A stretch of DNA of 64,000 bases from Dimorphilus gyrociliatus (lineage: Eukaryota; Animalia; Annelida), in NCBI GenBank assembly GCA_904063045.1, contig CAJFCJ010000028.1, positions 687,230-751,229 on the forward strand. The letters are read 5' to 3'. Position 1 is the first letter of the stretch. Each line of letters begins with the position of its first letter. This document shows, in pieces, positions 3,308-26,500 of this stretch. A model generated the notes under the pieces. The model had not been told where the DNA came from, did not search any database, and worked only from the letters and a program-made list of their open reading frames with translations. The translations under genes and the position numbers were made by a program.

Positions 3308-4593
<1,286 letters not shown>

Positions 4594-14237: not shown

Positions 14238-16246
14238 ATGGCTCAAGCAAAAGTTGGACATAAAATAGATTTAACGAAATTACACGAAATCACTGATGAA
14301 CAAGTTCTACATAGAATGGTTTGTTGTAATATTTAGTATCAAAGAAAGAAAAAAAAACAGTCTTTAGTTGATTTATACGCAATTGTACAGGCCTATTAGT
14401 AGATATATTATTTCTACAGTTTGTTAAAAAATTATTCTCATGTTCACCTAATCAAAACTTGTTTATAGCATACTTTATTCATATATACACTTGAATTTTA
14501 TATAGATTAAACGAGAATTACGTGTTTTATCATTATTTATATAGAGATATTATCATCAATTATAAAATGTTAATTCCATTTGTTTTTTATCTTTAAACCA
14601 ATTATAAATCGTTAAATTACTTTTTATTCTTACCCCCGTAGATTCACGATACCAATGACAATGATCTAAGGATAGAGATAAGAGCAAGATTAAGAGAAAT
14701 AAGGGAAAAGAAAAATGGTTTGTTTATAATACTACTAAATGTTTTTCGAATAGCTCATTTTTAACTATTAAAAAATAAAATGTAGGTCAAATATTCATTT
14801 ATTTATTTTAAATTGACAATTTTTATGTTAACCTACAAAGTATTTCGCATAAAATCTATACCGTTTTGACCCAGCAGTTGGCACGAATGGACAAAAAAAA
14901 AGCCTCAGATTTCTTCTTGTTTTTTTTTTTTATCTAAAACATCAATACATTGTATCTACAGTATAAATATTATATAAATCAGTATATACTGTTGTTTATA
15001 CTGTATATAGAGTATATTCACTAGAACTTTAAAATGCTTTAAATTACCAATTACGTTGCTAATTTAAGAACTCTTCGCTATTAGCTGATACGGATAAAAA
15101 GAATAAAGTTAGGGAAGAGGCTCTAGAGAATTTGCTAAAAGAGAAAAAGAGACTTGCCGAAGAAGAAAAGGTTAAAAAGTTACAAGAATGTTTGGAAAGG
15201 GTTAAAGCAGATGATAAACAAGCCTCCGTAGGTAAAGTTGACTTGGAAACTGTTAAACCTTCAACTTCATCTGACCTTTCTACAAAAGGTATTTCTTAAT
15301 CTTTCAATTCTATTCAATAAATGATCATTTAGTGGTCGTCTTCTGCTAGTAGATTCGCAAATTTCAAGTACAAAGTTGTTCAAGGGAGCTGCCTCAACAT
15401 CAGGGAGTAAGGTAACAAAAAACCCTATGCCAATCACCTCTCAAACAAAAGGTTAGAGTTACGCCATCTAACGGTCTAATACGCTTTTTTTAAGAGATTG
15501 TCCTACGAAACAAACTAGGATATAATTAGTTTGTCAATATACAGATGACAAACCGATAGTTGGTTCGAAGCAGACTAAACAAATCAGCCGAGTAGGAATA
15601 ATGAGCGGTTCAGGATACAAATTAACAAAAACTCAAACATCAGGTTTGTATTTTGTGTAAGTTTTCCAAATAAAAAATCGCTCTTATCTAAAGTTTAATA
15701 GAATTCCTTATATTCATATTTTAATATAATTTCTATATATGATAAAGTCAAAAATGTTCTGATTAGTTGTTTAATAATAGATACTCAATTTCTTAATACA
15801 AGATATATTGATATATTGATATCAAAAATTGTTTTTAAATAGGATCGGCGTCTAATCGACCTATGCTGCAAAGATCCGCAAGTACAATTAAGCAAATGCT
15901 GTTGGAATGGTGTAAAATTATGACAAAAGATTATAATGTGGAGATTAGAAATTTCTCCACAAGCTGGAATGATGGAATAGCATTTTGCGCTTTAATACAC
16001 AACTTTCGACCTTATGCGTTCGATTTCAGTAAACTTAAACCTGAAAATAGAAGAGCTAACTTTACATTGGCCTTTGAAGTTGCCGAAAAAGAGGCTGATA
16101 TTGCACCACTATTGGAAGTAGATGATATGGTAAAAATGATGAATCCAGATTGGAAGTGTGTATTTACATACGTTCAAAGCTTCTATAGACGTTTCAGAAA
16201 CTGGGAGAAGGATGATGAAGAAAAAGAAACAAAGAAGAAAACTTAA
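14238..16246 (+). CDS. Smoothelin-like protein (N-terminal smoothelin motif, C-terminal CH domain); 6 coding exons
   Basis: MAQAKVGHKIDLTKLHEITDEQVLHRM|IHDTNDNDLRIEIRARLREIR (smoothelin motif). Phase-consistent exons lead to a CH domain: LLEWC...NFSTSWNDGIAFCALIH...PDWKCVFTYVQSFYRRF. The start codon could lie in an unseen upstream exon. Confidence 0.85.
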
Positions 16247-16738: not shown

Positions 16739-18753
16739 TTAAAGTTTTGAAGCTTGTTTAACAAATGGTCGGATATGCTTGAAATAAGATTCATGTACCT
16801 GGCGATAAAATCAATTATATAATTTTACAATTTTCAGTCTCTTTTTAATTTACCTGGGTTTTGTTCAATTCATCTTTCATAGCCCATTCAAGCATGTTTT
16901 CGTAAACTCTACCATCGTATCTACCAAGAACACTATCCAAAACCTAGTATGAGAAAAATAGATAAGTTTTTTCTTATATATTATTGAGATAGTAAATTTT
17001 ACTTTATCAGGAAATTCGAAGGCGTCAACCAGACCAACAGCATCTGGTCTTAGACTCTTTAAAGCGTATAGGAAACCATTATAAATGAAAGATTTTTGTT
17101 GTTTACTCAAATAGTTTTCCTGTATATATGAAATTAAGTATTATTAATATTGCATCGACATAATATCAAACTGGAAAACAATTCTACGTACGCTCATAAA
17201 GTCACCAGAATTTTCAAGTATTCCGTGAAGGGCGTATAATTTACCTAATAAAGTCAATACTCCTATAACTGAAGCCGGAACCTGTTTCAAAGAAACGGTT
17301 TAAGAAAAAATGAAGCAAATTAAAAGAGATAAAAAACCTGATTGTTAGTTAAAGTTTCCAGTTTTTTAGCAAAGGCCTCAACTACAACGTAATGACCATA
17401 GGCTTTAGCAGCCATAACCAAAGCTACTGCGCATTCATTCCAAGCGTCATACGATGCCATACCATTTTTGATTTCTCTATCCAATTCGAAACTGGCCATG
17501 TGAACTAGGCTAAAATAATCAACGAATTTGATTATTATATGCTATTCAATTAAAAACTGATATATTTTATTACGACTTACTAATAAGCTCTAGCTCTATA
17601 GGCTTCAACTAAATCAACCATATTTACATCCTCCGTAATGGAAGATTTTGGAGCGGGCTTTTTATTGAGAAAAGCGACTGATCCTGGCAATTGGTCTCCT
17701 CGTTTAGCCATGTTAACACATTTTACCAAATATCTTGCAGCTTGTAGATACATAACAGTATTTTCACCCTCATATGTAACTCCTGGTAAAGCGTTTACGT
17801 AGATTTTTGGGATACCGCTACAGTGGGAGAAACCATGACCTCCGCAGGATCTTCGGCAAATTTCCATTCCAACAACAGCCCAATCAGTTGTGAAAGCTTT
17901 CAACGCAGAAGACAGACCATGCAACTAAAGGAAAGAAATGCTTTATATTCTATCAAAAATAGAATTAGGAAAACAAAAAAAGCTTACTTCGGGTAGCCTG
18001 TCTATTTCTCCTCTATCAATCTCGCTGTTAACAGAAAAGTATATATTTTCCATTTCTTGAGCAACAAAGAGGAAAGCGTAGGCAGTAGCCAGTTGTGGAA
18101 ATAATTTTGCCTGTTGGGCTCTATAATCCATAACTTTTGGTTCACCAGCACCAGGTTTAATTTCCGATTGCCTTCTAACGCAACTGTATCTTATCGCTAT
18201 GGTAGCACATTGAGCAAGAGACAAAGCAGCCACATCTCTAATTAGTACTGATCTAACAAAAACCATAGTACCATATGTCAATTTGGAATTTTTGGCTTTT
18301 ATGTAAGTTCCATCAGGCTCAACTCTGGAATGTTTCATTAACATATTTTCACGTGGAATTCTTACGTGGTCAAATTGCATAAATCCATTATCATTAGCAT
18401 CGTAGCCAAACTTTGGTCCAATATCACCAAGAGTCACGCCTGGTTGAGGCATATGATTCTCCAAACTTCTGATTTGTACAATAAAAGGATGAGGACCATA
18501 ATTCTGTCCTTTAACGATCAATTGAGCCATAACAATCGCATGGTTTGTACTCTTTCCAACTATAATGATATTTTTATATAATTAATTATATTGTTAAAAT
18601 AGGTTAAATAGCGAAAAAAAATAACGTACGATTTCCAGGCCACCACTTAAGAGAAGTTCTTGTTGGCGAGTGAATTACGAACTCTTCTGTTTTCTCATCA
18701 TATGTAGCAGTTGTTTCCAAACCTCTGATAAAGGTTCCTGAGCGAAATTTAGA

Positions 18754-18796
<43 letters not shown>

Positions 18797-20932
18797 AAAG
18801 AATAATAAATAGAAAAGAATAAGGAGCTATCAATTAATGTAAAAGAATTCTAAGAGAACAGAGCTTGCATTACCATGTCCCAATTCAGTTTGAGCGTAAG
18901 TGCCCCAAATTTTATATTGTGTTCCCAAAGGTAGCCATTTTTCCCTCTGCTCTGGAGACATTTGGTAGCGAAGAGTATACATGAACATGCTATCATGCAG
19001 ACCGTTACTACGTGAAACATGGGGGAAAGCGTGGCTGAAAATTAGAACTTTTAGTCTTTTGTTCTCTTGAACATGATTTTTCTCTGGCATATGTAAATCT
19101 TCAAAAGAAATTTTTCAATACAAAAGTTATACACTTTCTAAAAGTCTAATTTTTTATATCTGTTCTGTTTTTAGCTTTGGTTTCCATTTAATAGGAACAA
19201 ATTTGTAATGCAAGCATTATTCTTACAATTAGAAAAATGGACATTTTGTTGTCAGTTTTCTTACCATGCCCTAGTTCAGTTTGAGCGTATGTGCCAATAA
19301 TTTGCAAGGTTAAAGCCTTTGGAAGCCATTTGGATTGCTGTTTTGGGGAAGCTTGACCCATCAGTGTGGGTATAAACATATCTGCGTGTAAGGTGAAGCT
19401 GGTCGACTCATTGGGAAATATGTGGCTTTAAGAGAATGATAAGTTGATATAAATTAATTATTGAATAACAAATGAATATTATATATACAGTATATGCTAA
19501 TATATATATATATACTTAGGTTTCACTATAGATTAATTTTATGACTGATTTCAATGATGGAGCTGACAATAAATGAAAATATCTCCCAACTGTTCTCAAC
19601 ACTTAAAAGAGCTCATAACTATTTGTTACAATTGGGATGTTTTGGTAATGCATATTCTGACTCATTACTTCTTTAATATCCTGCTCACCGTGTCCCAATT
19701 CCGTTTGAGCATATGTACCAAATATTTCATATTTTAAAGCTTTTGTCAACCATTTTTCATTTTGTTTCTGGGATGCTAATCCCCTTAGAGCTGGAATAAA
19801 CACTCCATCATGTAAACCCCAGCTTGATGCCTGACTCGGAAAGAGGGAACTAACAAATTATAAATATGTCACTAATTATTATTGCTGATAAGAAATTAAT
19901 GTATTCTGTCCTAACAGATGTAATACTACTAAATTTGATTAGGGAACATTATTAACTGATAATCAATGCTTAATGCTATAAACTTATTATCAATAAAGAT
20001 TTTGATATCATAAAAAAAAAATAAATACAAGAAAAAAGAATACTGATAAGGGTCAATTTCTAGGTTAAATGACCTTAAACTCTTAAACTTTAACCAAGTG
20101 TCAAAATATTGGATACACGTACTCTATTCTAAAAAGTATGATCAAGCTAAAGATAGCATTTATGATGGGGTAAGAAAGAGATAGAGAGGTTGCATACAAA
20201 GATAGATGTATGTATATATAAGTATTAATAATAGAATGTACCTTGATAGATAGATAGATAGACAGTTAGATAGATATATAGAAAGAGATAAAATGATGTA
20301 GCTAATTAGTGAGGCATCCAGACATTTGTAAAATTATCACAGTTCAGTTGAATAAAGCAAAATTTTAGTTGTAGAGTAATGGAACCTCAGCTAAACATTT
20401 ATACTATGCTGTCTTATATAAAGAAATACTATTCGATTCGTTTTAATTTACTTTATATATCTTTTCTTTTAAAATTTGTTTTGATTGAAATTTTAGTGAA
20501 ACCCAGATTATAATACTTAATTTCTTCCTTAATTACCTTCTATAGATGTATAAATCAGTAGGATCAGTTATTCCTAACTTTCCTATTTTTTTTATCATTT
20601 TAACTGTTTTTTCCACAGCTGCTCCATATTTCTCACTTCTTGACAAGAAGTTGTACGATGTCATGTCGAAATCAGGATCATTCAATGCCAAATTAGCTGA
20701 AAAATTGAAACTTTAAATATGAATCCTACTTTTTAACCTTTGAAAGAGAATAATTGAAAGTGATAAAAGCATCTAATTCAAATAAGAAATTTATTTATTT
20801 ATACTATATACCATATTTTCTTCTTTTCTCCGTCTTTTCCGGCGTGCCATCGATAGCGTTAGTCAATGCTTCTTGTTCAAAACTAATTCTATCGCGCTCA
20901 GCTTGCAAATCTGGATTTACAGTACCCGCCAT
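16739..20932 (-). CDS. ACOX1: Peroxisomal acyl-CoA oxidase 1, multi-exon, ending in PTS1 SKL
   Basis: [13 protein letters not shown] start; [11 protein letters not shown]|[14 protein letters not shown]; KWWPG; [12 protein letters not shown]; CGGHG; TYEGENTV; final exon [19 protein letters not shown]. Confidence 0.95.
18760..18794. repeat. (AT)n microsatellite in the ACOX1 intron between exon 3C and exon 4
   Basis: Pure AT run about 20 nt from the exon 4 acceptor at 18737. Confidence 0.9.
18874..19034 (-). CDS. ACOX1: ACOX1 exon 3 variant C (161 nt)
   Basis: ttttcag|...G|gtaatg; [54 protein letters not shown]. Confidence 0.85.
19265..19425 (-). CDS. ACOX1: ACOX1 exon 3 variant B (161 nt)
   Basis: ttaaag|...G|gtaaga; [54 protein letters not shown]. 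Confidence 0.88.
19689..19849 (-). CDS. ACOX1: ACOX1 exon 3 variant A (161 nt)
   Basis: ttag|...G|gtgagc; [54 protein letters not shown]. Confidence 0.85.
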
Positions 20933-24884: not shown

Positions 24885-26500
24885 ATGGCATCAGTTCTAC
24901 CACCTCAAAAAGCCCAAGAGACTTATACGTTCTCAAGTCAGCCTAAAGCAGTTAGGGAAAGAAAGAAGTATAGGGATCCGTATCAGGACGAGTAAGTCTG
25001 CAACAAACATCTCTAATAAATATTATAACTTACAAAATTTTTCTATTTTCCAGGAATCAACCAGCCGCATATGGAAATATTATGTATGATAAGAGAGTTA
25101 TTAGAGGGAATACTTATGCTCTTCAGCATTTACCAGCCGTAAGTTATAACAGTTTATTAGTTTGTTGTTAGGAATTTGATCGCTAAGGCTTGACAACTGT
25201 ATGTTCAAGTATGTTTAATTTTATTTAATTTTAGAAATAAATCAACTTTAAGTTTACTTATTGAAATATAGCGTAATGAATATTCATATTGTTAATAATC
25301 TTTATGATTCTTGTATATTTTATATCATATAAAGAGGAATAATTTACTTTTTAGACTTCCCAACCGGATCCAGTAGAAGTTCAGAGACAGAATGAGGCAA
25401 AGAAACGCGCAAGAGCTAGAGCAAGGGCGAAACAACAACTACGTCCTAGGACTCCTGACGCAGTTGAAGGAAGGAAACACATGGATGTTCAGACAGAACT
25501 TTATTTGGAAGAAATTAGCGATAGGGTTGAAGAGGCCGATCAAGAAGTACAAACCGATGCTTTCTTAGATAGACCGCCAACTCCTTTGTTTGTACCAGCT
25601 AAAACTGGTAAAGATGTTGCTACTCAAATATTAGAAGGAGAAGTAAGTAGTACAATTTTCTCTAATTACACTAAGTAAGTGATACTGATATTGATTTTTT
25701 TCTTTCTTTTTGCACTTAGTTGTTCGACTTTGATATTGAAGTACAGCCAATTCTTGAAGTTCTTGTTGGAAAAACAGTTGAACAGTCCCTGTTAGAGGTG
25801 TTGGAAGAAGAAGAATTGGCATCCCTCAGAGAGCAACAGAGAGCTTTTGAGGAATTGCGTAATGCTGAATTAGTTGAGCAACAGAGATTAGAAGAGCAAG
25901 AGAGAAGGCATAGAGAGGAAAAAGAACGTAGAATGAAACAACAACGTGAAATACTTCGTAAAGAAAAGGAAACTGCCGACAAAATTGCAGCAAGAGCTTT
26001 TGCTCAAAGTTATTTGGCCGATTTGATACCATCCGTTTTTGGTACTTTGGCCGATAATGGATACTTTTATGATCCGATTGAGAGAGATGTTGAACAAGGC
26101 TTCTTGCCTTGGCTTATGGATAGAGTGGCAGAAAAAATGGACAACTCAACACATTCCCGAATGGTGTTGGATGGTCTTGTCAGAGAAGTTGTTAGGAATA
26201 GAGTTCAAGCATTCAAAAAATTGGATGACTCCAAAAAAGCAGCGAAAGCACCTCTTGTTCCTAAAGAGGCTGAAGGAGAAGCTGATGAACCCGTAGCAGA
26301 AGTTGCTCCGGCAGCGGAACCTCAGGTAAACTAAGCTGAAATTTTCGCTTAAACAAGAAAAGAAAATCTAAAACAAAATTCTTTTTATTATCAATTTTTA
26401 GGAAGCGGCACCAACTGAAGCCGCACCGGAAGAAGAAACTACAGGCCCAGTTGAAGAGGACCAACAGGAGGAGGAAGAAGCGGAAGCTGAGCAGGAATAG
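24885..26500 (+). CDS. RSPH3: Radial spoke head protein 3
   Basis: TYTFSSQPKAV; YGNIMYDKRVIRGNTYA; GRKHMDVQTELYLEE; DRPPTPLFVPAKTGKDVATQI; LFDFDIEVQPILEVLVGKT; coiled coil; acidic A/E/P tail. Confidence 0.95.

What the first reader, a model, noticed from the sequence alone, without database searches (positions are those of the whole stretch)
18874..19849. ACOX1 carries three tandem, obligately mutually exclusive exon-3 variants
Seen: three paralogous exons (19849-19689, 19425-19265, 19034-18874), each exactly 161 nt with good AG/GT sites, open, and ending [11 protein letters not shown]. Exon 2 ends in phase 2 and exon 4 needs phase 1, so including 0, 2 or 3 copies shifts the frame and only one can be used. 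Established: mammalian ACOX1 has two mutually exclusive exon-3 forms with different acyl-chain preferences. Inference: an invertebrate with three intact, strongly diverged copies (C is the most diverged: [15 protein letters not shown]) may make three substrate-tuned oxidases from one locus. The duplication is either much older than vertebrates or arose convergently and expanded.
Basis: partly seen in the sequence, partly recalled or inferred. Interest (0 to 1): 0.85.

Follow-up and report, generated by a model that had tools for sequence, protein, structure and literature searches.

The report
Three swappable exons in worm ACOX1
The fat-burning enzyme gene ACOX1 of the tiny marine worm Dimorphilus gyrociliatus carries three alternative copies of one exon. 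Only one can be used per message, selection keeps all three, and conserved RNA pairings look placed to choose among them; similar exon sets are already known in vertebrates, molluscs and echinoderms.

Summary
The window carries an intact 11-position ACOX1 gene on the minus strand (664 aa, ends in SKL). It has three tandem 161-nt exon-3 copies with AG/GT sites. Exactly one copy keeps the reading frame.

The 3B isoform equals DgyrCDS13943 of Dimorphilus gyrociliatus residue for residue. 3A and 3C are not in the public annotation. A syntenic contig from an unidentified relative has the same three exons in the same order, each with dN/dS far below 1, so none is a relic. I could not reach transcript evidence for 3A or 3C.

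This is not unique. Public gene models already hold isoforms that differ only in exon 3 in Aplysia (four), Biomphalaria, Owenia and Glandiceps. A 2021 paper reports independent origins of the ACOX1 exon duplication in chordates, echinoderms and molluscs. My exon tree favours repeated, lineage-specific duplication.

New here: the 3' end of exon 3C and its 5' splice site are complementary to conserved elements just downstream of 3A and of 3B (about -31 kcal/mol each, same sites in both species). Two weaker upstream pairings fit a docking-site/selector switch. The scan noted other mutually exclusive exon clusters in this genome, none in ACOX1.

The parts
20812..20932 (-). ACOX1 exon 1 (ATG at 20932; 121 nt)
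   Evidence: Gene model checked by splicing and translation. Same length and splice sites in relative L001.
20537..20696 (-). ACOX1 exon 2 (160 nt; ends with two bases of a codon)
20493..20517 (-). U1: candidate upstream docking element in intron 2, 20-44 nt after exon 2 (core TCTGGGTTTCACTAA identical in the relative)
   Evidence: In both species its best duplex partner in the whole downstream region is the site about 100 nt upstream of exon 3B (-18.4 and -22.8 kcal/mol). The first ~46 nt of intron 2 align between species.
20377..20396 (-). U2: candidate second upstream docking element in intron 2 (GTTTAGCTGAGGTTCCATTA)
   Evidence: Forms the top-ranked intron 2 x intron 3B-3C duplex in both species (-18.9 and -19.6 kcal/mol), with a small margin over the next best. 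One A:T pair is missing from both arms in the relative.
20095..20124 (-). E1: conserved intronic element with no conserved pairing partner
   Evidence: 83% identical over 30 nt to L001 7844-7873. No partner better than shuffles in both species.
19689..19849 (-). Exon 3A (161 nt, AG/GT)
   Evidence: The orthologue in L001 (8296-8456) has dN/dS 0.125, Fisher p 4e-7.
19629..19664 (-). Selector A: element 25-60 nt downstream of exon 3A, complementary to the end of exon 3C and its 5' splice site (TGCATTACCA ... TCCCAATT)
   Evidence: Duplex of -31.2 kcal/mol. Together with selector B it is one of the two best of 345 windows, with the next best at -20.6. The orthologous site in the relative gives -31.3. 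TGCATTAC lies at 19645-19652.
19503..19529 (-). Candidate upstream selector for exon 3B (core GTGAAACC), 78-104 nt before its acceptor
   Evidence: Pairs with U1 in both species.
19265..19425 (-). Exon 3B (161 nt, AG/GT); the copy used in the public protein DgyrCDS13943
   Evidence: The orthologue in L001 (8699-8859) has dN/dS 0.028, Fisher p 2e-11.
19189..19224 (-). Selector B: element 41-76 nt downstream of exon 3B (AGAATA..GCTTGCATTAC..TGTTCC), complementary to the end of exon 3C and its 5' splice site
   Evidence: A 32-nt stretch is identical in the relative. The 11-mer GCTTGCATTAC occurs twice in the window, on opposite strands, against 0.06 expected. Duplex -31.0 and -32.9 kcal/mol. The stem closes both the MFE and the centroid fold in both species, z -3.6 and -3.2.
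19169..19189 (-). Candidate upstream selector for exon 3C (AAATGGAAACCAAAGCTAAAA); 3' half of the same conserved block as selector B
   Evidence: Pairs with U2 in both species. Lies in the conserved block seen.
18874..19034 (-). Exon 3C (161 nt, AG/GT); the most derived copy (MFMYT, IWG)
   Evidence: The orthologue in L001 (9203-9363) has dN/dS 0.20, Fisher p 1.3e-4.
18852..18887 (-). Downstream docking site: last 14 nt of exon 3C, its GT donor and 20 further nt of the intron (TGAATTGGGACATG|GTAATGCAAGCTCTGTTCTCTT)
   Evidence: The last 25 nt of exon 3C and the next 20 nt of intron are identical in the relative. The same scan on the donors of exons 2, 3A and 3B finds nothing stronger than -22 kcal/mol and no conserved partner.
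18630..18737 (-). ACOX1 exon 4 (108 nt; begins with the last two bases of the codon opened by exon 3)
16739..18559 (-). ACOX1 exons 5-11 (18559-17988, 17924-17581, 17509-17338, 17281-17192, 17119-17003, 16943-16854, 16798-16739); the protein ends ASKL then stop
   Evidence: Exon 5 matches human and rat ACOX1 structures at E 4e-68. All exon lengths and splice sites are the same in L001.

Best explanation
This is the single-copy ACOX1 (peroxisomal acyl-CoA oxidase 1) gene of the annelid Dimorphilus gyrociliatus. Its 161-nt exon 3 has been triplicated in tandem. This exon encodes part of the N-terminal domain up to the conserved [10 protein letters not shown] stretch. Only messages with exactly one copy keep the reading frame. 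Any other combination stops early and is presumably removed by nonsense-mediated decay (inferred). The gene can therefore make three oxidases differing in 53 residues, all kept by purifying selection. 3B is probably the main form, and 3C the most derived. By analogy with mammalian ACOX1a and ACOX1b, the swap most likely tunes acyl-chain preference (inferred, untested). The choice is probably guided by competing RNA pairings. The end of exon 3C and its 5' splice site form a docking site. It can pair with a selector just downstream of 3A or of 3B. That pairing hides the 3C donor and loops out the unused downstream copies. When the docking site is free, 3C is used. Two weaker conserved pairings run from intron 2 to sites upstream of 3B and of 3C, and would loop out the unused upstream copies. 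The pairings that cross each other cannot coexist, which gives three states, one per exon (inferred from topology).
For: Gene and organism: the spliced model gives 664 aa ending in SKL. The 3B isoform is 664/664 identical to DgyrCDS13943, which carries Pfam PF14749, PF02770, PF22924 and PF01756. Exon 5 matches human and rat ACOX1 at E 4e-68. Frame rule. Selection: paralogue pairs have saturated synonymous sites (pS 0.78-0.87) but pN of only 0.25-0.34. A syntenic contig of a relative has all three exons, 161 nt each with AG/GT, in the same order. Orthologue dN/dS is 0.125, 0.028 and 0.20, against 0.044 for constitutive exons; Fisher p is 4e-7, 2e-11 and 1.3e-4. The exons have exon-like GC of 0.40-0.45, against 0.16-0.26 in introns. 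RNA: selectors A and B are the two best partners of the docking site along the whole upstream pre-mRNA in both species. They give about -31 kcal/mol, against -20 to -21.5 for the next best. The stem closes the MFE and centroid folds in both species. The 11-mer occurs twice against 0.06 expected. Control donors show nothing similar. Upstream pairings. A model with a downstream docking site and the proximal exon as default is described in PMC4691838.
Against: I obtained no transcript evidence. The public annotation and the protein collection hold only the 3B isoform. The RNA pairings rest on two species. The docking site and selector B are identical in both, so there is no true covariation for the strongest stem. 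U2 beats its next-best partner by only 1.5-1.7 kcal/mol. Capitella, which also has tandem copies, shows no comparable pairing. No substrate data exist for any invertebrate isoform.
Confidence: 0.72

Rival explanations
1. Only exon 3B is ever used. 3A and 3C are leftover duplicates with no role.
For: The only public protein of this gene uses 3B. 3B is by far the most conserved copy (dN/dS 0.028). Capitella shows that copies can decay: its third copy is truncated by a stop.
Against: 3A and 3C keep length, frame and AG/GT sites in two species whose synonymous sites are near saturation. They have dN/dS of 0.125 and 0.20, with Fisher p of 4e-7 and 1.3e-4. Introns in the same interval are full of indels.
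Confidence: 0.06
2. The conserved intronic elements are real, but they are not a three-way selector system. They may only silence exon 3C by hiding its donor. Or they may be protein-binding splicing enhancers or silencers whose complementarity is incidental.
For: Both strong stems cover the same 3C donor, so simple repression of 3C would explain them. The upstream pairings are modest. No covariation is available for the strongest stem. Capitella lacks an equivalent.
Against: There are two separate selectors, each placed just after a variable exon, of near-equal strength, and both conserved in position in two species. Selector A pairs in a slightly different register in each species yet keeps 10-11 bp. 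That fits the published downstream-docking architecture better than a single silencing hairpin.
Confidence: 0.25
3. The worm cluster descends from one ancient bilaterian duplication shared with vertebrate exons 3I and 3II.
For: The 161-nt exon with the same phases occurs in molluscs, annelids, a nemertean and a hemichordate. Tandem copies occur in many phyla. Deep nodes of the 55-residue tree are unresolved, so shared ancestry cannot be excluded.
Against: No worm copy groups with vertebrate 3II, which groups with an amphioxus gene (UFBoot 86-95). Copies within Glandiceps, Owenia, Lytechinus and Aplysia X1/X2 are sisters (95-100). Single-copy loci are interspersed: Paralvinella, Tubulanus, Argopecten. 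PMC8373072 concluded that the origins were independent.
Confidence: 0.1
4. The three copies are an assembly artefact (collapsed or expanded repeats, or haplotypes).
For: None beyond the general risk with tandem repeats.
Against: The copies are only 55-63% identical in DNA. An independent Logan assembly of another species has the same three.
Confidence: 0.01

Closest known systems
Vertebrate ACOX1 exons 3I/3II (isoforms ACOX1a and ACOX1b)
   Same: Same gene and same exon. The isoforms differ over the same residues (about 90-144), and every exon copy ends in GTYAQTE(L/M)GHG. Copies are tandem and only one is used per message. Chain-length preference differs between the isoforms (PMC11178532).
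   Different: Vertebrates have two copies, not three. The vertebrate 3II type (RFFMPAW) has no counterpart in the worm; all worm copies keep KWL. The origins are probably independent. No RNA-pairing mechanism for vertebrate ACOX1 turned up in my searches. PMC5224494 describes U2AF-dependent regulation instead.
Invertebrate ACOX1 exon-3 isoforms in public annotation: Aplysia californica X1-X4, Biomphalaria glabrata X1/X2, Owenia fusiformis (two models), Glandiceps talaboti X1/X2
   Same: The isoforms are identical except across the exon-3 residues (aa 96-146 in Aplysia, 95-136 in Owenia, 108-146 in Glandiceps). The two tandem 161-nt copies were seen directly in Glandiceps, and two intact copies plus a decayed third in Capitella.
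   Different: Copy number and age differ between lineages. The D. gyrociliatus 3A and 3C isoforms are not annotated. Annelids are not among the lineages named in PMC8373072.
Docking-site/selector RNA pairing in arthropod mutually exclusive exon clusters (Dscam exons 4, 6 and 9, 14-3-3xi, srp)
   Same: There is one docking site that can pair with only one of several selectors. The selectors lie just downstream of variable exons and the docking site lies downstream of the cluster. The proximal exon is the default when the docking site is free. Additional upstream pairings fit the bidirectional model (PMC4691838). An origin by duplicating one arm of a stem is proposed in PMC6071210.
   Different: This is a different phylum and gene. 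The docking site overlaps the 5' splice site and coding end of the last variable exon, rather than lying within the intron. Nothing has been tested experimentally, and only two species are available. I found no paper combining docking-site and selector terms with annelids or molluscs.

Membership tests
ACOX1 (peroxisomal acyl-CoA oxidase 1) | Acyl-CoA oxidase domain set (N-terminal, middle, C-terminal alpha 1, ACOX C-terminal) | tested here: met
   P0182, identical to the 3B isoform, carries PF14749, PF02770, PF22924 and PF01756.
ACOX1 (peroxisomal acyl-CoA oxidase 1) | Closest relatives are ACOX1 rather than ACOX2, ACOX3 or mitochondrial acyl-CoA dehydrogenases | tested here: met
   Best PDB matches are human and rat ACOX1 (E 4e-68). 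The full length is 51-55% identical to vertebrate, amphioxus, Owenia and Tubulanus ACOX1.
ACOX1 (peroxisomal acyl-CoA oxidase 1) | C-terminal peroxisomal targeting signal (PTS1, SKL-type) | tested here: met
   The model ends ...KQASKL then stop.
ACOX1 (peroxisomal acyl-CoA oxidase 1) | Oxidase activity on acyl-CoA | not testable with these tools
   Needs an enzyme assay.
Tandem mutually exclusive exon cluster | Adjacent homologous exons of equal length and equal splice phase | tested here: met
   Three copies of 161 nt with the same phases, 53-58% aa identity, separated by introns of 263 and 230 nt.
Tandem mutually exclusive exon cluster | Co-inclusion or skipping is incompatible with a productive message | tested here: met
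   Zero, two or three copies shift the frame, with stops at codons 107-222.
Tandem mutually exclusive exon cluster | Every copy is maintained by selection | tested here: met
   Orthologue dN/dS 0.028-0.20, Fisher p at most 1.3e-4.
Tandem mutually exclusive exon cluster | Transcripts contain exactly one copy, and each copy is used | tested here: inconclusive
   Only the 3B isoform is in the protein collection. Searches for 3A- and 3C-containing products returned only genomic read-through fragments.
Docking-site/selector competing RNA structure | One docking site is complementary to several selectors through overlapping bases | tested here: met
   Selectors A and B both pair with GTAATGCA(AGC) and flanking bases at the 3C donor, at about -31 kcal/mol each.
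Docking-site/selector competing RNA structure | Conservation of the pairing across species, ideally with compensatory change | tested here: inconclusive
   The same sites and energies occur in the one relative available. Selector A shifts register but keeps pairing, and U2 and its partner lose one pair on both arms. Two species are too few for covariation statistics. Capitella was negative.
Docking-site/selector competing RNA structure | Disruptive and compensatory mutations change and then restore exon choice | not testable with these tools
   Needs minigene or in vivo mutagenesis.

The most novel reading that the evidence does not exclude
A compact three-state RNA switch of about 1.7 kb picks one of three ACOX1 exons in an annelid. 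State A is selector A paired with the docking site. State B is U1 paired with its selector, together with selector B paired with the docking site. State C is U2 paired with its selector, leaving the 3C donor free. The alternative pairings cross one another and so exclude each other. As far as my literature searches show, this would be the first docking-site/selector system described in a lophotrochozoan, and in a metabolic enzyme gene. It would also have arisen together with an independent duplication of an exon that vertebrates, molluscs and echinoderms also duplicated.
Probability: 0.4. Interest if true: 0.62.

Novelty: new member of a known kind. Interest (0 to 1): 0.45.

Why it matters
ACOX1 sets the chain-length range of peroxisomal fatty-acid oxidation. 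In mammals the exon-3 swap changes substrate preference. This worm adds an annelid case with three maintained copies to a published pattern of repeated, independent duplication of the same exon. That strengthens the idea that this 161-nt exon is a favoured place for tuning the enzyme. The practical gain is the candidate RNA switch. It is small, conserved in two species and makes clear predictions, so it could be tested in a minigene. That would show whether the competing-pairing mechanism known mainly from arthropods also works in spiralians with very short introns. It also flags two unannotated isoforms in the reference annotation of D. gyrociliatus.

Tried and rejected
1. Transcript evidence for 3A and 3C was not obtained. 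A profile search for full-length proteins found only the 3B protein in a one-member cluster. A 53-aa profile of the exon copies found only genomic fragments that read through into introns. Exact look-ups of the window's ORFs found nothing.

2. No third dinophilid species was available for covariation.

3. MAFFT misplaced short exon fragments, so alignments A1-A3 were discarded.

4. The exon-level tree is well supported only near the tips. The 3A+3B grouping (UFBoot 90) appeared with 48 sequences but not with 34, so I treat it as weak.

5. The conserved element E1 in intron 2 has no conserved partner.

6. Capitella shows no docking/selector-like pairing between its c1-c2 intron and the c2 donor.

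7. No Rfam family matches window 18500-20800.

8. (TA)n tracts give many apparent inverted repeats. They are low-complexity and are not conserved in the relative.

9. The long mollusc models P0344 and P0183 are fused neighbouring genes, not exon read-through.

10. The Owenia locus was not on record.
Full report
**Observation.** On the minus strand, three segments lie at 19849-19689, 19425-19265 and 19034-18874. Each is 161 nt, preceded by AG and followed by GT. Read from their second base, each gives 53 open codons ending in [10 protein letters not shown]. They are 55-63% identical in DNA and 53-58% in protein. A sensitive search finds exactly three copies in the 64-kb window. With this window's base composition, a random 53-codon frame stays open with probability about 0.012.

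**Gene and organism.** I built the whole gene by hand from open frames and splice sites, then checked it by splicing and translation. It has 11 exon positions from the ATG at 20932 to a stop at 16739. All introns are GT-AG. The product is 664 aa and ends in the peroxisomal signal SKL. Exon 5 alone matches human and rat ACOX1 structures at E 4e-68.

The isoform built with exon 3B is identical over all 664 residues to the NCBI protein DgyrCDS13943 of Dimorphilus gyrociliatus. That protein carries the four acyl-CoA oxidase Pfam domains. This confirms the organism, which earlier scan notes had named. It also shows that the public annotation holds only the 3B form. Over its full length the protein is 51-55% identical to ACOX1 of vertebrates, amphioxus, Owenia and Tubulanus.

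**Frame rule.** Exon 2 ends with two bases of a codon. Each exon 3 supplies the third base and ends with one base, and exon 4 completes that codon. One copy gives the full ORF. No copy stops at codon 107. Two or three copies stop at codon 169 or 222. Productive messages therefore need exactly one copy. Removal of the other forms by nonsense-mediated decay is inferred.

**Are all three maintained?** Between paralogues, synonymous sites are saturated (pS 0.78-0.87) while pN is 0.25-0.34. The duplications are therefore old and have been constrained since.

A Logan assembly of SRA run SRR23372229 yielded a 14.7-kb contig (L001) from an unidentified close relative. It carries the same gene, and every exon has the same length and the same splice sites. 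It holds the same three exon-3 copies in the same order, each pairing one-to-one with its window counterpart:

| Copy | aa identity to orthologue | dN/dS | Fisher p (fewer non-synonymous than synonymous changes) |
|---|---|---|---|
| 3A | 77% | 0.125 | 4e-7 |
| 3B | 94% | 0.028 | 2e-11 |
| 3C | 77% | 0.20 | 1.3e-4 |

Constitutive exons give dN/dS of 0.044 overall, with single exons ranging from 0.005 to 0.164. All three copies have exon-like GC (0.40-0.45) against 0.16-0.26 for introns. None is a neutral relic, and the assembly-artefact idea fails.

**What I could not show.** I found no transcript-derived protein with 3A or 3C. The 3B protein sits alone in its 90% cluster. A profile of the exon copies returned only genomic fragments that read through into introns. 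Use of 3A and 3C therefore rests on evolutionary evidence only.

**How unusual is it?** The same 161-nt exon, with the same phases, exists in molluscs, other annelids, a nemertean and a hemichordate. Copy number varies between lineages.

- One copy at the loci I read: Littorina, a Capitella paralogue, Macrostomum, Tubulanus, Branchiostoma lanceolatum, Argopecten and Paralvinella.
- Capitella ACOX1: two intact copies plus a third cut short by a stop.
- Glandiceps: two copies about 87% identical in protein (7 differences).

Public annotations already contain isoforms that differ only across exon 3. There are four in Aplysia californica (X1-X4, differing only at aa 96-146). There are two each in Biomphalaria, Owenia and Glandiceps.

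Martinez-Gomez et al. 2021 state that the ACOX1 event evolved three times: in chordates, in echinoderms and in molluscs (PMC8373072). Their 2022 table dates the human event to Chordata (PMC9741552).

My 55-residue exon trees support only shallow nodes:

- The worm orthologue pairs have support of 96-100.
- Copies within Glandiceps, Owenia, Lytechinus and Aplysia X1/X2 are sisters (95-100).
- Vertebrate 3II groups with one amphioxus gene (86-95).
- Aplysia X4 groups with Biomphalaria X2 (99).
- 3A+3B group at UFBoot 90 in the larger set only. Deeper nodes are unresolved.

All worm copies keep the KWL motif rather than the RFF of vertebrate 3II. The balance favours repeated lineage-specific duplication, with annelids as a further lineage.

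**Candidate mechanism of choice.** Most intron sequence does not align between the two species, but a few blocks do.

The strongest block includes 32 identical nt, 41-76 nt downstream of exon 3B. It contains GCTTGCATTAC, the exact reverse complement of the first 11 nt after exon 3C (GTAATGCAAGC). This 11-mer occurs twice in the window, on opposite strands, against 0.06 expected.

I scanned the whole upstream pre-mRNA with a 36-nt docking probe, made of the last 14 nt of exon 3C plus 22 nt of intron. In both species the two best partners are the same orthologous sites. One is selector A, 25-60 nt after exon 3A (-31.2 and -31.3 kcal/mol). The other is selector B (-31.0 and -32.9 kcal/mol). The next best site gives about -20 to -21.5.

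Folding the segment from selector B to the docking site gives this closing stem in both the MFE and the centroid structure, in both species (z -3.6 and -3.2). The same scan on the donors of exons 2, 3A and 3B finds nothing stronger than -22 kcal/mol and nothing conserved. The last 25 nt of exon 3C are identical in the two species. The same stretch differs at three positions in 3A and two in 3B.

This layout matches the published downstream-docking model, in which the exon nearest the docking site is used when the site is unpaired (PMC4691838).

Two weaker pairings are also conserved in position:

- An element 20-44 nt after exon 2 (U1) pairs with a site about 100 nt upstream of 3B (-18.4 and -22.8 kcal/mol). 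This is U1's best partner in both species.
- An element 141-160 nt after exon 2 (U2) pairs with the 3' half of the conserved block upstream of 3C (-18.9 and -19.6 kcal/mol). It ranks first in both species but by a small margin. One A:T pair is absent from both arms in the relative.

By position along the transcript, several of these pairings cross one another:

- U1 with its partner crosses selector A with the docking site.
- U2 with its partner crosses all the others.
- U1 with its partner and selector B with the docking site are compatible.

That gives three exclusive states, one per exon. This step is inference. Capitella shows no comparable pairing, and no Rfam family lies in the region.

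**Function.** In mouse and human, ACOX1a is most active on C10 and on dicarboxylic C12 and C6. ACOX1b is most active on C16 and alone handles C24 (PMC11178532). The swapped region overlaps predicted FAD-binding residues, which are conserved between the two human forms (PMC9741552).

In the worm, the TYAQTE.GH stretch and 11 other positions are invariant in all six sequences. 3C carries changes that are rare or absent in the panel I examined: MFMY/MFMH in place of MF(I/L)P, and W in place of I/V before GTYAQTE. Different substrate ranges are a reasonable expectation but are untested.

**Verdict.** This is a new, three-copy, annelid member of a known and published pattern. The conserved docking-site/selector-like pairings are the part that looks new and directly testable.

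Noticed in passing
window 20095-20124 (minus strand, intron 2): A 30-nt element, GAGTACGTGTATCCAATATTTTGACACTTG, is 83% identical to L001 7844-7873 inside an otherwise unalignable intron. No pairing partner is conserved in both species, and its role is unknown.
   Followed up: partly
window 19850-20536 (intron 2), 19426-19688 and 19035-19264: The introns around the exon-3 cluster are 230-687 nt. The gene's introns downstream of exon 4 are 55-72 nt. The extra length holds the conserved elements.
   Followed up: partly
window 18753-18800 and 19491-19514: (TA)n tracts lie in intron 3C-4 and intron 3A-3B and give many apparent inverted repeats. They are not conserved in the relative, so they are probably just microsatellites.
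   Followed up: partly
exons 3A-3C compared with the other exons (window vs L001): Synonymous divergence is lower in the three exon-3 copies (dS 0.69-0.96) than in constitutive exons (about 1.8 overall). This is expected if alternative exons also carry splicing or RNA-structure constraints. The sample is small and near saturation.
   Followed up: partly
L006:4026-4110 (Capitella teleta ACOX1 locus): A third exon-3 copy has a good acceptor, but a stop comes after about 27 codons. It is a decayed pseudo-exon downstream of two intact 161-nt copies (3430-3590 and 3703-3863). Only the second intact copy is in the annotated protein.
   Followed up: partly
P0356, P0445, P0446, P0444 (Aplysia californica ACOX1 X1-X4): Four RefSeq isoforms differ only at residues 96-146, which implies four mutually exclusive exon-3 copies in a sea slug. 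Aplysia X4 and Biomphalaria X2 share an old variant type (HxAAF).
   Followed up: partly
P0348 (Lytechinus pictus, 831 aa): This sea-urchin model contains two diverged exon-3-like segments about 110 residues apart. It is probably a mis-spliced model that includes two alternative copies.
   Followed up: no
P0189, P0191, P0194, P0229, P0281 and similar vertebrate models of 705-716 aa: Several deposited vertebrate ACOX1 models include both exon 3I and exon 3II in series. This is an annotation error, because including both 161-nt exons would shift the frame of a real mRNA.
   Followed up: no
L005:3073-3233 (Macrostomum lignano): The end of exon 3 is not followed by GT, so the intron between exons 3 and 4 appears to be lost in this flatworm.
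   Followed up: no
window 15863-16246 (+) and 25720-26334 (+); L001 1659-2560 and 11834-12226: The genes called next to ACOX1 on the relative's contig (Radial_spoke_3 and a CH-domain protein) seem to match ORFs flanking ACOX1 in the window, which suggests conserved synteny. I did not run Pfam on the window ORFs.
   Followed up: no
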